From Salpingoeca rosetta (Eukaryota > Protista > Choanoflagellata): a DNA stretch of 64,000 nucleotides. Shown piece after piece: positions 37,595 through 45,054 of this stretch (position 1 is the first letter of the stretch; each line of letters opens with the position of its first letter). The stretch spans positions 657,855-721,854 of the forward strand of contig JAWQFM010000030.1 in assembly GCA_033442325.1 (NCBI GenBank), read 5' to 3'. A program made the translations under genes and the position numbers. Under the pieces are notes generated by a model, which made no database searches, was not told where the DNA came from, and saw nothing but the letters and a program-made list of their open reading frames with translations.

Positions 37595-40500
37595 ATGAAC
37601 CTGTTGACGGTGCCTGCAGCCAAGCTGCTGCTGGTGCCCGTGCTAGTGCTGCTTGTGTTAGCAACACCAACGAGTGTTGTTCACGCATCCCACGACATGT
37701 GCATGAGCGATGCACTTCGCAGTACGTTGTGTGAATGTTGTCCGGACGTTTTGTGTCTGCGTGTGCGTCTGTGTGTTTGTGTGTGTGTGTGTGTGCGCGC
37801 GCGCGCGCGCGCGCGTGTGTGTGTGTGTGTGTGTGTGTGTGTGTGTGTGTGTGTGTGTGTGTCTGCGTCTGTGTCTGTGTGTGTATGTGTGTGTGTATGT
37901 GCCTGTGTGTCTGTGTGTGTGTATGTGTGCGTGTGTTTACCTGCCAGTCACGTCAGGTGTGTCCGGTGCAAAGCCTATGATTCATGGACATCAATGCAAT
38001 CCCACCCATTTTGCAGTGGTCACCACTGTCCCATGGGAGGACAGTAGCTCTGAAGGCAATGCCCGCTGGGAGTCTCACGACGTCTGGAGCGTCGGCCGCG
38101 CTCCTTGCTCCTGCGAAGAAGCCATCATCGAGCGTCCCATCGACATCAACGATTCCATTCAGGTGTGTGTGTGTGTGTGTGTGTGTGTGTGTGTGTGTGT
38201 GTGTGTGTGTGTGTGTGTGTTTGTGGGTGTGAAATATCGCTCTNNNNNNNNNNNNNNNNNNNNNNNNNNNNNNNNNNNNNNNNNNNNNNNNNNNNNNNNN
38301 NNNNNNNNNNNNNNNNNNNNNNNNNNNNNNNNNNNNNNNNNNNTACACACACACACACACACACACACACACACACACGCACACACACACACACACACAC
38401 ACACACACACACACACACACACACACACACGCTCTCTCTTACCCTCGCACACACATACACACACACACTCGATCGCTTTCTGTTCCTCACCCCACCCTTA
38501 ACACCCTCTTGCCACCACTCCAACCACTTTCCCCAACCACTCTCCCGACTGTGCAGGCGCGCATGACGCAGCTGACGCTGATGCCGGACCAAACGCTGAC
38601 GCTGAACAGGGGCGGGGAGATTGTCATCACCAACCAGGCGCCCGACGAGCCCTGCCCCGTGATTGAGCAGTTTGATGTCTCCGACTTCACCGCCACCGTC
38701 TTCGAGGCCACGTGGCAGCCCAGCAACGACGGCGGGAAGCTGCGCGTGCACGTTGATGGCGACGATGAGGAGTATGATGTGGCGGGCACAACCTGGACCG
38801 GCACCATTCCGCTCGACAACACCGCCAACACGACCTTCACCCTGGAAGTGGCCAGTGGCACGGGCGCGGACCGCGTCGTCGCCCGCAAATCCGTCACCGT
38901 CCCACGTGCTGCCCCAGGTATACGTGTGTGTGTGTGTGTCTGTGTGTGTGTGTGTGTCTGTGTCTGTGTCTGTATCTGCGTCTGTGTGTGTGTGTGTGTC
39001 TGTGCCTGTCTCTGTGCCTGCGCCTCTGTCTGTCTCTGTGTCTGTGTGTGCGTTTTGATATGTGTGTGTATGTGCTTCTCACACCTCCGTTTCCCGTCCA
39101 TGTCCCACTTGGCTTTTCCCACTTCCCCTCTCCCCCATCCCGTCACCATTCCCCTTACACAATACTTCCTCCCGCCTCCTTCCTCATCCGCTGTCCTGTA
39201 GTCATCTGGGCTGCCCCCACCTCTGGCGAGTGGTCCACGGGGGCCAACTGGATTGGTGCCCGCCCGCCCTGTAGCGACCAGCACGCCCGCGCTGCCCTCA
39301 ACGGCAACAACAACGACAACGACGACGACGATGGTGGTGATGGTGGTGACGATAGCAGTGGCGCGTATGACATCACGGTGACACAAGACACGACAGTGCG
39401 AAGCTTCACGTGGGAGCCCAACTCCGCCCTGGTGCTCACCGCGGACGCCACGTTCACACTCGCGTACGACGCGGAAGTGGATGACGGCGCAGAGTGCACG
39501 GACCCGGGCCTCGCCACCACAACCATCGCGTCCACAACGACAACAACCACCACGGTGTTCACCACCACCACCACCACGACAACAACCCCCACGGTGTTCA
39601 CCACCACCACCACCACCACCACGGTCCCCACCACTGGTACTGGCGGTACTGGTGGCGTGTCGACGATCACGCCCGGCAGCACCACGTCCAACACGTTCCC
39701 AACGACATCGAGCAATGGCGGTGCAACGACGACGACGCCACGCGGTGGCCGTCGCCCTCCGCCCGTGACCACATCCACGTCGACGAGCGACCCCGTCACC
39801 ATTGGCAAGCAGGAGAGCTCTGCCTCCATTGCGCCCGTGGCCGGCGCTGCCGGTGGTGGTGTGGTGGTGATCATTGCCATCATCCTCATCATCGTCTTTG
39901 TGCGCCGCAAGCGCCGCCGCCTGGTTGTCGGCGACTATGCACAGCTGGACATGACGGCACTCGACATGAAGGACGCTCCGTTCTCGTCGTACTTTGGACC
40001 TGTCAAGCTCGCCCATCACGACGTTGGTGCACACGTGGCGTTTGGGAGAAAATGTGTGTGCGTGGGAGGGGGCGGGGGCGGGGTTGTTGTGGTTGCCATT
40101 GCTGTTTACGTTGCTGCATGTGCGTGTGTGTGTGCGTGCGTGTGTGCGTGTGTGTTGGGGGGGGGTTCACATTCGTGTCGCACCATGCCTTGTCTCCCAA
40201 TTTACCTCCACCTTGTCCTTCCTCCATCTGCTATGCAACCTGTGTTCGTTCTTTCGTTGATGCAGGGTAACCAGCTGTGGTGCTTCACCCTCAGGCAGGG
40301 CGCGTCAACCCTCCTCAGGGAATGCATGGAAAAGGTGCGCAGGCATGCGCTGAACATGGCGCTCGTTATGTGTGTGTGTCTGAAACGGCTTCGTTGCTTT
40401 CATGATAGCACATTGTCGTCCTTCTCATCCTTCCCCATTTCTCTGCTTATTGCCACTGCACCCTTTCCACCACATCTCCGTGCACAGAACATTCGCCTCT

Positions 40501-43785: not shown

Positions 43786-45054
43786 ATGGCAGCGGTCGTG
43801 TTGCTTTTCTTCTTGGCTGGCATCGTGCGAGCTCCGTGGCCGTGCTGCGGTGATGCGGTGATTGAATATGATGATGAGAGGGAGGGAGGAGCGCTCCACA
43901 TCAACACGAGCGATCCTGTGGGCCAGCACGTGTTCATCAACGGTGTGGACATGCAGCAGTTGCACGATCTCGTGCAAACGCAAGCCAGCATGCTGGCGGC
44001 CCAGGAGAGCGCGAACGTGCAGCTGCGAGCCACCGACCAGCGGCAACACCAGGCGCTCTGCCGCCGGTTTCCGCCGGTCGCTGATTCGGCTGGCATCACC
44101 AACGTGGGCATACGGAACCGTGACTGGCACGGCGCCGTGTTGGCAAACAACGGCAAGATCTACGGCATCCCAAACACCGCGTCCAACGTTCTCGTCATCG
44201 ATCCAGCGGCCAATACAACAGACACCATCCCCCTCACGGGGGTGACCAATGGCGGAACCAAGTGGGCCAGCGGCGTGCTACGTACGCAGAACGGCCTCAT
44301 CTACGGCATCCCGCACGACGCAACGGCCGTGCTGATCATCGACCCCAGCACCAACACGGCAGACACAACGACCCTGGCATCCCCGCCTGGTGGTGCCAAG
44401 TGGAACAGCGGCATCCTCGCAGACAATGGGCTTATCTACGCCATTCCCTGGCGCCAGCCCGCTGTCCTCATCATTGACCCAGCCACCAACACGACCGATG
44501 CCACCAGCATCGCAGGCCTCACCTTCGGGGACAGAAAGTGGTATGGCGGCGTGCAGGCGCGCAACGGCCTCATCTACTGCATCCCCCACGACGAAGACTA
44601 CGTGCTCATCATTGATCCAGCGACAAACGCGTTTGACACCACCTCCATCACCGGTCTGCCGAGTGCGGGCCTCAAGTGGTGGGGCGGCGTGCTTGCAGGC
44701 AACGGCCTCATCTACGGCATCCCGTCGAGCGAAACATCCGTCCTCATTATCGATCCCGCGACAAACACCGTCGACACCACCTCCATCTCTGGCCTTCCCG
44801 TTGGCCCGAGCAAGTGGCTGGGCGCTGTGCCAGCGTCAGGTAGGGGCGGCCGCATCGTCGGCATCCCCTCATCGGCTTCGTCCGTGCTCATCGTGGACAC
44901 CATCACCGGCACAGCGGACGCGACGTCCCTGTCCGTCTCAGACGCCCTCGTAAGCGACGACAAGTGGTGGAACGGCGCCCTCGCACCCAACGGGCTCATT
45001 TATGCCCTTCCACAAACGTCCAACGCTGTGCTGGTCATCGGTCCCGGCTGCTGA
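43786..45054 (+). CDS. Secreted 7-bladed beta-propeller protein (paralog 2, intronless)
   Basis: Signal MAAVVLLFFLAGIV...; GALHINTSDP...VFINGVDM; coiled coil; seven KWxGGVLAxNGLIYGIP repeats; ends GPGC*. Confidence 0.92.
   Translation: MAAVVLLFFLAGIVRAPWPCCGDAVIEYDDEREGGALHINTSDPVGQHVFINGVDMQQLHDLVQTQASMLAAQESANVQLRATDQRQHQALCRRFPPVADSAGITNVGIRNRDWHGAVLANNGKIYGIPNTASNVLVIDPAANTTDTIPLTGVTNGGTKWASGVLRTQNGLIYGIPHDATAVLIIDPSTNTADTTTLASPPGGAKWNSGILADNGLIYAIPWRQPAVLIIDPATNTTDATSIAGLTFGDRKWYGGVQARNGLIYCIPHDEDYVLIIDPATNAFDTTSITGLPSAGLKWWGGVLAGNGLIYGIPSSETSVLIIDPATNTVDTTSISGLPVGPSKWLGAVPASGRGGRIVGIPSSASSVLIVDTITGTADATSLSVSDALVSDDKWWNGALAPNGLIYALPQTSNAVLVIGPGC

What the first reader, a model, noticed from the sequence alone, without database searches (positions are those of the whole stretch)
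37595..45054. Candidate cubam-like modular receptor: amnionless-like receptor pseudokinase beside secreted propellers with a cubilin-N-like trimer segment
Seen: the receptor ectodomain has two repeats, [44 protein letters not shown] and [46 protein letters not shown]. The next gene, and two paralogs in the window, start with G-ALH(I/V)NT..V.(V/I)NG.D(L/M/V) followed by a coiled coil. Established: in the animal cubam receptor, the amnionless N-terminal beta-helix (W...F....NW...R.PC...L..DG.L.L) docks a trimeric cubilin N-terminal beta-helix (G.L.F...I.LN.EDL) that continues into a coiled coil. Inference, from alignments recalled from memory: the propellers could be interchangeable trimeric ligand-binding heads that plug into a membrane anchor carrying a phosphotyrosine tail, i.e. 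a swappable-head receptor outside animals.
Basis: partly seen in the sequence, partly recalled or inferred. Interest (0 to 1): 0.9.

Follow-up and report, generated by a model that had tools for sequence, protein, structure and literature searches.

The report
Cubam-like receptor and propeller pair, choanoflagellate
In the choanoflagellate Salpingoeca rosetta, a membrane receptor with a dead kinase lies next to a secreted propeller protein, and structure modelling predicts that three propeller chains plug into the receptor the way cubilin plugs into amnionless in the animal vitamin B12 receptor; this is computer evidence only.

Summary
The window is from Salpingoeca rosetta.

**Receptor.** The receptor (PTSG_13080, a truncated model) is one expressed gene across both assembly gaps.
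- Gap 1 is intronic.
- Gap 2 hides 435 in-frame coding bases of the kinase core.
- The ectodomain holds two homologous W..W..PC repeats separated by an FN3-like domain.

**Propeller.** The next gene, 0.67 kb downstream, is a secreted seven-bladed DUF6923 propeller with a conserved N-terminal beta segment, a coiled coil and a cysteine.

**For the cubam reading.**
- ESMFold2 docks three propeller N-terminal strands on the three base strands of repeat 1. The score is 0.73 against a best control of 0.01; 51 of 78 solved complexes and 2 of 108 mismatched pairs reached the mark.
- The predicted geometry matches the published cubam interface.
- One paralogous repeat hits Pfam Amnionless below threshold (E 3e-4).
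- Language-model neighbours of both repeats are G8 and Amnionless.

**Against.**
- PDB sequence searches find no amnionless or cubilin.
- Both AlphaFold2 folds failed.
- The genome has at least 127 propeller modules but only 5 receptors, and only this receptor has a propeller neighbour.
- The modelling pass may reflect memory of the solved cubam structure.

Binding is a good, untested hypothesis. The scan had already noted the propeller family elsewhere in this genome.

The parts
37595..43116 (+). Receptor pseudokinase gene: one transcript, at least 7 readable exons plus unread exons in gap 2, about 1115 aa. The public model PTSG_13080 (P0121, 564 aa) is truncated at 40544.
   Evidence: A spliced RNA contig spans 37575-43054. 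The exon concatenation equals P0121 residues 38-564. The gene aligns to paralog P0122 over residues 1-511 and 657-995.
37595..37721 (+). Exon 1: start codon and signal peptide.
   Evidence: Read directly. GT..AG joint 37721/38017 appears in three RNA contig runs and in raw reads.
38017..38162 (+). Exon 2: apex half of repeat 1 (W...W...PC.C motif).
38244..38343 (.). Assembly gap 1, inside intron 2, flanked by TG and CA microsatellites. It holds no coding sequence.
   Evidence: The RNA contig joins exon 2 directly to exon 3. Four paralogs have an intron at the same position with no extra exon.
38566..38637 (+). Base turn of repeat 1 (P0121 residues 132-155): three short strands spaced 8 residues apart. 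This is the predicted docking face for three N-module strands.
   Evidence: The interface residues are 57-80 of the construct, mapped to the window.
38653..38901 (+). FN3-like beta-sandwich between the two repeats. The name is inferred from the sequence pattern and a weak model.
   Evidence: This was the only part of the AlphaFold2 model with regular strands, at pLDDT 50-57. No Pfam hit.
39202..39491 (+). Repeat 2, with a 16-residue Asp/Asn/Gly-rich insert that is specific to this copy.
   Evidence: The repeat 2 of paralog P0122 gives the Pfam Amnionless hit (E 3e-4, profile positions 9-77).
39492..39902 (+). Thr-rich mucin-like stalk, then the transmembrane helix at 39852-39902.
   Evidence: Read directly.
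40266..40544 (+). Exons 5 (40266-40332) and 6 (40486-40544): a degenerate kinase N-lobe with no Gly loop and Arg in place of the beta-3 Lys.
   Evidence: GT..AG joints. Alignment to P0122.
40934..41638 (.). Assembly gap 2. It hides about 435 nt of coding sequence (145 codons), the central kinase exons.
   Evidence: The RNA contig holds 561 nt between 40022 and 41785, of which 126 nt are readable exons. The paralog has 145 residues there in three exons.
41785..43116 (+). Last exon: the end of the kinase C-lobe and a 397-aa tail. The tail has 23 Tyr, one NPxY motif (NPVY, about 42205-42216) and three 38-aa tandem repeats.
   Evidence: Pfam PK_Tyr_Ser-Thr profile positions 204-255, E 0.14..
43786..45054 (+). 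Secreted stalk-and-propeller gene, single exon, 422 aa.
   Evidence: Open reading frame. Pfam DUF6923, 42.9 bits against a cut-off of 27. 286 homologs.
43849..43953 (+). N-module beta segment: N-terminal strand, GALHINT, then V.ING.D. Its first 9-10 residues and Leu16 of the construct are the predicted contacts with the receptor.
43954..44061 (+). Coiled coil ending in the conserved Cys (44059-44061).
   Evidence: Among 42 paralogs the helix-to-Cys length clusters at multiples of 7.
44122..45051 (+). Beta-propeller of DUF6923 type. Seven blades were counted from the repeated motifs, not modelled. The protein ends in a conserved PGC.
3537..4784 (+). Propeller paralog A, with the same N-module.
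55349..56851 (+). Propeller paralog C, with the same N-module and a much longer coiled coil (116 residues to the Cys).

Best explanation
**Receptor (shown).** The first gene encodes a type I membrane receptor. Its order is signal peptide, repeat 1, FN3-like domain, repeat 2, mucin stalk, transmembrane helix, catalytically dead kinase, and a Tyr-rich tail with one NPxY motif. It is transcribed and spliced as one mRNA.

**Propeller (shown).** The second gene encodes a secreted protein. Its mature N-terminus is a highly conserved short beta segment, followed by a heptad-quantised coiled coil, a Cys and a seven-bladed propeller. It is one of at least 127 such genes in the genome. There are five receptors of this type.

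**Predicted, not shown.**
- Three propeller chains form a trimer through the beta segment and the coiled coil.
- The three N-terminal strands form a triangular face.
- That face docks end-on onto the three base strands of receptor repeat 1.
- This is the beta-helix to beta-helix docking seen between cubilin and amnionless.

**Inferred.** The receptor would tether trimeric propeller heads to the cell surface. It would couple ligand capture to endocytosis or phosphotyrosine signalling through its tail. Many different heads could share the few anchors.
For: **Gene structure and expression.**

**Two homologous repeats, shared by five paralogs.**

**Complex prediction.**
- ipSAE was 0.72, 0.73 and 0.73 in three runs, against a best control of 0.01.
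- The mark was reached by 51 of 78 solved complexes and 2 of 108 mismatched pairs. On eukaryotes it was reached by 39 of 65 solved pairs and 2 of 126 unrelated pairs.
- The partner's pLDDT was at least 78. The runs agreed in at least 96% of contacts.
- This job (three copies plus a partner) is unlike the calibration set of single-chain pairs.

**Interface geometry.**
- Contacts are residues 1-9(10), 14 and 16 of each N-module copy with receptor residues 57-80.
- One copy pairs with each of the strands centred on residues 60, 68 and 76, an 8-residue spacing.
- The cubam paper reports cubilin strands 42-49 on an amnionless base made of residues 69/71, 77/79 and 85, the same spacing.

**Weak independent pointers to an amnionless or G8 type fold.**
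- Pfam Amnionless, E 3e-4, at profile positions 9-77 (beta-helix 1), for repeat 2 of paralog P0122.
- For both window repeats, the nearest named families in language-model space are G8 (0.83-0.84) and Amnionless (0.79-0.81).

**N-module properties.**
- The strand follows the signal peptide directly in nearly all of 40 sampled paralogs.
- The beta segment is 62% identical among 42 paralogs, against 27% for the coil and 49% for the first blades.
- Helix-to-Cys lengths cluster at 21, 28, 35, 42, 49 and 56.
- Its language-model neighbours are trimeric fibre proteins, Peptidase S74 and YadA stalk.
Against: - The pass may come from the model's memory of the solved cubam complex. It would then show likeness, not binding, and it cannot say which family member binds.
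- The cubam authors note that open-ended beta-helices associate end-to-end non-specifically. An in-silico dock could therefore be generic.
- No control used an unrelated trimeric coiled coil.
- HMMER finds no amnionless or cubilin chain in the PDB with single sequences or profiles.
- Only 1 of 7 repeats hits Pfam Amnionless, and below the cut-off.
- Both AlphaFold2 jobs failed (pLDDT 38.7 and 39.0). No fold search was therefore possible.
- Adjacency is weak evidence. There are at least 127 N-modules against 5 receptors, and only this receptor has one nearby.
- No receptor homolog was found in other choanoflagellates that have the N-module.
- The window's propeller copy is atypical. It has extra residues, including two Cys, before the strand, and a small loop insertion.
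Confidence: 0.5

Rival explanations
1. The two genes are unrelated neighbours. The N-module is only an oligomerisation cap for soluble, collectin-like propeller lectins. The receptor's repeats bind something else. The modelling pass reflects generic end-to-end stickiness of open beta-helices, or memory of cubam or VgrG-PAAR structures.
For: - At least 127 N-module genes stand against 5 receptors, and 4 of the 5 receptors have no N-module within 30 kb.
- The N-module occurs in Microstomoeca roanoka and Barroeca monosierra, where no receptor homolog was detected.
- High conservation of the beta segment can be explained by the trimer fold alone.
- The caveats stated apply, and the cubam paper remarks on non-specific association of open beta-helices.
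Against: - ipSAE was 0.73 against 0.00-0.01 in three controls, with a symmetric one-strand-per-copy interface on exactly the base turn of repeat 1.
- In the tool's calibration, unrelated pairs rarely pass (2 of 126) and distant cousins of true partners did not pass (0 of 84).
- The strand sits at the very N-terminus of the mature protein throughout the sampled family. A mere oligomerisation cap would not need that placement.
Confidence: 0.35
2. The repeats are G8-type beta-helix caps, as in CEMIP, TMEM2 and PKHD1, rather than amnionless-type pyramids. They act in glycan or matrix binding, and the likeness to amnionless is only the shared N-terminal cap motif.
For: G8 clusters rank above Amnionless for both repeats in language-model feature space: 0.83 against 0.79, and 0.84/0.82 against 0.81. 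Eight of the ten best named hits for repeat 1 are G8.
Against: - No Pfam G8 hit appears at E up to 10 for any of the seven repeats, while Amnionless hits one.
- The repeats are about 80 residues long and stand alone. They are not followed by the PbH1 repeats that extend a G8 cap into a long helix. That point about G8 rests on my own knowledge.
- All language-model scores are under 0.9, so they are leads only.
Confidence: 0.1
3. The locus is an assembly artefact. The gaps join pieces of different genes, so there is no single receptor carrying both the repeats and the Tyr-rich tail.
For: There are two gaps inside the gene. The flank at 40700-40933 is AT-rich, unlike the paralog and without RNA cover. 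The public model stops at 40544.
Against: One RNA contig runs from exon 1 to the tail and keeps the frame. The unread part has exactly the paralog's length, 145 codons.
Confidence: 0.02

Closest known systems
Cubam: amnionless plus three cubilin chains (Larsen et al. 2018, PMC6283879; PDB entry code 6GJE recalled from memory)
   Same: - A single-pass membrane anchor has two small N-terminal beta-helix-like repeats with a W...W...PC start.
- The partner has an N-terminal beta segment followed by a coiled coil.
- Three N-terminal strands are predicted to dock on the triangular base of repeat 1, with the same 8-residue strand spacing as amnionless residues 69/71, 77/79 and 85.
- The cytoplasmic tail has an NPxY-type motif.
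   Different: - There is no SEA domain and no Cys-rich region. An FN3-like domain lies between the repeats, and there is a mucin stalk.
- The cytoplasmic part is a pseudokinase plus a long Tyr-rich tail.
- The partner's head is a DUF6923 propeller, not EGF and CUB domains.
- The partner family has at least 127 members against 5 anchors.
- Sequence similarity is at or below detection.
VgrG or gp5 spike capped by a PAAR protein (type VI secretion and phage tail spikes)
   Same: [quoted passage not shown] The cubam authors themselves drew this parallel. The N-module's language-model neighbours are phage tail-spike and trimeric adhesin proteins.
   Different: Those are bacterial and phage puncturing devices with no membrane receptor and no coiled-coil stalk or propeller. 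No sequence relation was tested or found here.
Collectins and ficolins (trimeric stalk-and-head soluble lectins)
   Same: These are secreted proteins with an N-terminal oligomerisation segment, a trimeric stalk and a C-terminal recognition head. They form a large diversified family. Earlier scan notes drew the same comparison.
   Different: The stalk here is an alpha-helical coiled coil, not collagen. The head is a beta-propeller. No dedicated membrane anchor is known for the animal proteins' N-termini.
Choanoflagellate receptor tyrosine kinases and receptor pseudokinases
   Same: It is a type I receptor with a PK_Tyr_Ser-Thr domain (paralog P0122, E 1.2e-20) and lineage-specific ectodomains.
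   Different: Catalytic motifs are lost in all readable paralogs. The ectodomain has no detectable homolog outside S. rosetta.

Membership tests
Amnionless (Pfam PF14828) | Score over the Pfam gathering threshold (30.4 bits) | tested here: not met
   The best score is 20.0 bits (E 3e-4), for repeat 2 of paralog P0122 only. The window's own repeats give no hit at E up to 10. One of seven repeats hits. A genome-wide search gives only a low-complexity false hit.
Amnionless (Pfam PF14828) | Two N-terminal three-faced right-handed beta-helix pyramids | tested here: inconclusive
   Two homologous repeats of about 80 residues are present. AlphaFold2 failed. ESMFold2 in the complex gave the ectodomain pLDDT 79 with a three-strand base, but no model was returned for a fold search.
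Amnionless (Pfam PF14828) | Cys-rich region and SEA domain before the membrane | tested here: not met
   There is an FN3-like domain between the repeats and a Thr-rich stalk. Pfam finds no SEA domain.
Amnionless (Pfam PF14828) | Base of beta-helix 1 binds the N-terminal strands of a trimeric partner | tested here: met
   Met in silico only: ipSAE 0.73 against a best control of 0.01, with the interface on the base turn of repeat 1.
Amnionless (Pfam PF14828) | Cytoplasmic FxNPxF endocytic motifs | tested here: inconclusive
   There is one NPxY motif, SNPVY in the window and FNPLY in paralog P0122. It is similar in kind but not the same motif or number. The amnionless FxNPxF motif itself is recalled from my own knowledge, not read in a tool result.
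Cubilin N-terminal region | Sequence similarity to the cubilin N-terminus | tested here: not met
   A profile of 17 N-modules finds no cubilin chain in the PDB at E up to 10. No Pfam family matches.
Cubilin N-terminal region | Intertwined trimeric beta-helix followed by a coiled coil | tested here: inconclusive
   Three copies modelled at pLDDT 78-79 with symmetric contacts. Stalk lengths are heptad-quantised. The oligomer number was imposed by me, not tested, and intertwining was not inspected.
Cubilin N-terminal region | EGF and CUB domain ligand-binding body | tested here: not met
   The body is a DUF6923 propeller.
DUF6923 beta-propeller (PF21959) | Score over the Pfam gathering threshold (27 bits) | tested here: met
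   42.9 bits, E 6.7e-11. There are 286 homologs, including bacterial ones at 44-50% identity.
Protein tyrosine kinase fold, catalytically inactive (pseudokinase) | Kinase fold present but the Gly loop, beta-3 Lys, HRD Asp and DFG are lost | tested here: inconclusive
   - Paralog P0122 has PF07714 at E 1.2e-20, with HSC in place of HRD and no Gly loop.
- Three other paralogs have HSC or HSS.
- In the window the N-lobe is degenerate, but the catalytic core lies in gap 2 and is unread.
G8 domain (PF10162) | Pfam match | tested here: not met
   No hit at E up to 10 for any of the seven repeats. There are only language-model neighbours at 0.82-0.84.

The most novel reading that the evidence does not exclude
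The beta-helix to beta-helix docking device of cubam predates animals, or arose twice. In S. rosetta it is used combinatorially: five receptor pseudokinase anchors can each carry any of more than a hundred disulfide-stapled trimeric propeller heads. That would give a swappable-head surface receptor repertoire for prey, bacterial cue or self recognition, wired to NPxY and phosphotyrosine signalling.
Probability: 0.35. Interest if true: 0.9.

Novelty: new variant of a known kind. Interest (0 to 1): 0.7.

Why it matters
- **Range of cubam.** Cubam is documented from insects to humans. I found no paper that links amnionless to choanoflagellates, and none among the top-ranked hits of a cubilin-plus-choanoflagellate search. 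PTSG_13080 is not mentioned in the searched literature.
- **If the docking is real.** The closest unicellular relatives of animals would then use the same unusual way of anchoring a trimeric ligand-binding subunit to a membrane protein. The head would be different, with a hugely expanded head repertoire and a signalling tail.
- **What that would offer.** It would give a concrete and testable function to one of the largest uncharacterised secreted gene families of S. rosetta and to an orphan receptor pseudokinase family. It would also bear on how animal endocytic and recognition receptors were assembled.
- **Annotation.** The public gene model needs correcting. The gene is about twice as long as annotated.

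Tried and rejected
- **AlphaFold2 folds.** I folded the whole ectodomain with 5 sequences (pLDDT 38.7) and a single repeat with 13 rows (pLDDT 39.0). Both were too poor, so I ran no fold search, because matches to such models are meaningless.
- **PDB sequence and profile searches.** I searched with repeat 2, repeat 1, the repeat profile and the N-module profile. Only chance-level hits came back, with no amnionless or cubilin.
- **Pfam Amnionless against the genome.** The single hit is Leu/Cys-rich low-complexity translation beside an aldehyde dehydrogenase-like gene.
- **Receptor homologs elsewhere.**
  - phmmer of repeat 2 against 1.84 billion representatives found only the window's own model and one paralog.
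  - A word-indexed search with the paralog's ectodomain found nothing further.
  - A 10-row profile search found nothing further.
  - The last two are limited by length windows and by the Thr-rich stalk taking up the word index, so these blanks are weak.
- **Co-clustering.** I rejected it as an argument. The nearest N-modules to the other four receptors are 37 kb to more than 1 Mb away.
- **Literature.** Nothing on amnionless with choanoflagellates, PTSG_13080, or amnionless with G8. The top-ranked hits of the cubilin/choanoflagellate search contained no mention of cubilin. The S. rosetta HGT paper does not mention these propellers.
- **Amnionless sequence.** For that reason I could not run a profile-profile comparison with the amnionless family.

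
Full report
**Source and gene models**

The window is from Salpingoeca rosetta. The receptor's public model is PTSG_13080 (P0121, 564 aa). Its closest paralog is annotated as a serine/threonine protein kinase (P0122, 995 aa). The genome handle G000 has 55.4 Mb.

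I rebuilt the receptor gene by hand from the sequence. Concatenating six exons reproduces P0121 residues 38-564 exactly. The exons are:
- 37595-37721
- 38017-38162
- 38557-38917
- 39202-40022
- 40266-40332
- 40486-40544

**The gaps**

RNA evidence settles the question put by the scan's program. One 3192-nt spliced contig runs from 37575 to 43054. Two other contig runs and stranded raw reads support it. The reads place the RNA on the + strand.

The GT..AG joints 37721/38017, 40022/40266 and 40332/40486 are seen directly.

The exon 2 to exon 3 join across gap 1 is direct. The 6 unplaced contig letters plus the trimmed ends equal the 9 bases 38154-38162. Gap 1 is therefore intronic and the frame holds. 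Four paralogs have an intron at the same point and no extra exon.

Gap 2 is different. Between 40022 and 41785 the contig holds 561 nt. Exons 5 and 6 account for 126 nt. The other 435 nt are not in the window. That is 145 codons, exactly the length of P0122 residues 512-656, which the paralog encodes in three exons.

The gene is therefore one in-frame unit of about 1115 codons. The public model is truncated, and the catalytic core of this copy is unread.

**The receptor protein**

The parts, in order, are:
- a signal peptide;
- repeat 1;
- an FN3-like domain, named from its sequence pattern and weak model only;
- repeat 2, with a copy-specific acidic insert;
- a Thr-rich stalk;
- a transmembrane helix;
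- a degenerate kinase;
- a 397-residue tail.

The tail has 23 Tyr, one NPxY motif and three 38-residue tandem repeats.

The two repeats are homologous to each other. Five genes in the genome share the whole architecture.

In the four readable paralogs HRD is HSC or HSS. The Gly loop is missing and the beta-3 Lys is Arg. 'Pseudokinase' is therefore well founded for the family and inferred for this copy.

**The propeller protein**

The next gene starts 0.67 kb after the receptor's stop codon. The receptor's 3' UTR reaches at least 43400.

It is a single-exon secreted protein with a DUF6923 propeller, 42.9 bits against a cut-off of 27. The propeller body has close bacterial relatives. The N-terminal module is found only in the choanoflagellate proteins.

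The genome holds at least 127 copies of that module, and three lie in this window.

I sampled 40 further copies, with these results:
- The signal peptide is followed almost directly by the strand E-V-V-(L/M/F)-x-E-D.
- The stretch from GALH to NG.D has no indels in all 42 sampled copies.
- G, H, N, T, N and G are invariant.
- The beta segment is 62% identical on average, against 27% for the coil and 49% for the first blades.
- The distance from the beta segment to the conserved Cys clusters at 21, 28, 35, 42, 49 and 56 residues. That is what a coiled coil with a register-dependent disulfide would give.

Language-model neighbours of the module are phage tail-spike (Peptidase S74) and YadA-stalk proteins, which are trimeric fibres. 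The scores are under 0.9, so these are leads only.

**Is it cubam-like? Sequence tests**

The sequence tests are weak.
- Pfam Amnionless hits one repeat only, repeat 2 of P0122, at E 3e-4 and 20 bits, below the 30.4-bit cut-off. The hit does lie on profile positions 9-77, which is beta-helix 1.
- The window's own repeats do not hit.
- PDB searches with single sequences and profiles find neither amnionless nor cubilin.
- For both window repeats, the nearest named families in language-model space are G8 and Amnionless, at 0.79-0.84.
- Both AlphaFold2 jobs failed for lack of homologs, so no fold search was possible.

**Is it cubam-like? The docking test**

I folded three copies of the N-module (window 43849-44115) with the receptor ectodomain (P0121 residues 76-352) in ESMFold2, without alignments.

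The verdict was that the model supports binding but does not show it.
- The score was 0.73 against a best control of 0.01.
- The mark was reached by 51 of 78 solved complexes and 2 of 108 mismatched pairs.
- On eukaryotes it was reached by 39 of 65 solved pairs and 2 of 126 unrelated pairs.
- The partner's pLDDT was at least 78, and the runs agreed in at least 96% of contacts.
- The job differs from the calibration, which used pairs of single chains.

The interface is specific.
- Residues 1-9(10), 14 and 16 of each copy touch receptor residues 57-80 of the construct. These are P0121 residues 132-155, window 38566-38637.
- One copy pairs with each of the three strands centred on construct residues 60, 68 and 76.
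- The published cubam interface is the same in kind. [quoted passage not shown] That face sits on the base of amnionless beta-helix 1, made of residues 69/71, 77/79 and 85, also an 8-residue spacing.

**Cautions**

- The tool warns that a pass can come from memory of a solved like complex. It then shows likeness, not binding, and it cannot tell which family member binds.
- The cubam authors note that open-ended beta-helices associate end-to-end non-specifically. They also note that VgrG-PAAR spikes have the same geometry.
- I had no control with an unrelated trimeric coiled coil, and I imposed the copy number of three.
- The window's propeller copy has extra residues, including two Cys, before the strand.

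**Genomic context**

Context does not add much support.
- Only this one of the five receptors has an N-module nearby. The others are 37 kb to more than 1 Mb from the nearest copy.
- With at least 127 copies, five of them on this contig, one adjacency among five receptors is only mildly unusual.
- The N-module also occurs in Microstomoeca roanoka, Barroeca monosierra and environmental sequences.
- No receptor homolog was detected outside S. rosetta. The last two of those searches have known blind spots.

**Verdict**

The cubam-like reading passes the only direct test I could run, and it does so with the right geometry. The evidence is computational, and family membership by sequence fails for both partners.

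I put the chance at about 0.5 that N-module trimers dock on repeat 1 of this receptor family. The chance is lower for this particular neighbouring pair. The main rival, unrelated neighbours with a generic or remembered dock, stands at about 0.35.

The case is best filed as a new variant of a known kind of system, not as a member of the amnionless or cubilin families.

Earlier notes of this scan had already described the stalk-and-propeller family on other pieces of the genome. None had linked it to a receptor of this type.

Noticed in passing
window 40652-40933: This AT-rich stretch on the left of gap 2 has no RNA cover and no likeness to the paralog's intron or exons. The first missing kinase exon would be expected about here, so the flank may be misplaced sequence.
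   Followed up: partly
window about 42300-42660: The tail holds three tandem 38-residue (114-nt) repeats, each with YALTSH, YDNN and YATA motifs. One RNA contig skips exactly one unit (42430 to 42545). This may be assembler collapse or a copy-number variant.
   Followed up: no
window 35159-36241: Just upstream on the same strand is an ORF for a Cys-rich, furin-like or growth-factor-receptor-like single-pass membrane protein (Pfam Furin-like_2, E 3.4e-10). Its short tail has an NPAY motif.
   Followed up: no
P0110 (Microstomoeca roanoka, EukProt): This protein carries three N-module-like beta segments in tandem before the propeller, as if the trimeric beta-helix could be lengthened by repeating the unit.
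   Followed up: no
window 44122-45051 and one search hits such as P0024 and P0037: The propeller body is 44-50% identical to proteins from Spirochaetota and Leptospiraceae and to many metagenomic proteins that lack the N-module. This hints that the head is of bacterial origin and was fused to a choanoflagellate stalk. The published S. rosetta HGT survey does not mention it.
   Followed up: partly
L050, L051, L053, L059 (G000 C15:1042k, C17:262k, C1:3078k, C4:939k) and L023/L024 (C35:510k, 584k): These are near-identical copies of N-module genes on different contigs, which points to recent duplication or to dispersal as part of a larger repeated block.
   Followed up: no
window 39315-39337: RNA reads show several alternative letters and back-joints inside the Asp/Asn/Gly-rich insert of repeat 2, with very high depth (bin 39273-39469). 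This is most likely cross-mapping of other GAT/GAC-rich transcripts rather than editing.
   Followed up: no
window 55349-56851: Paralog C has a coiled coil of 116 residues to the Cys. It is built of repeated EAQ...N(D/E)AL-like units and is about three times the family's modal length.
   Followed up: no
window 43891-43911 and family-wide: The invariant H-I-N-T-S of the N-module contains an N-x-S/T glycosylation sequon. Whether the Asn is glycosylated or buried as an Asn ladder is unknown.
   Followed up: no
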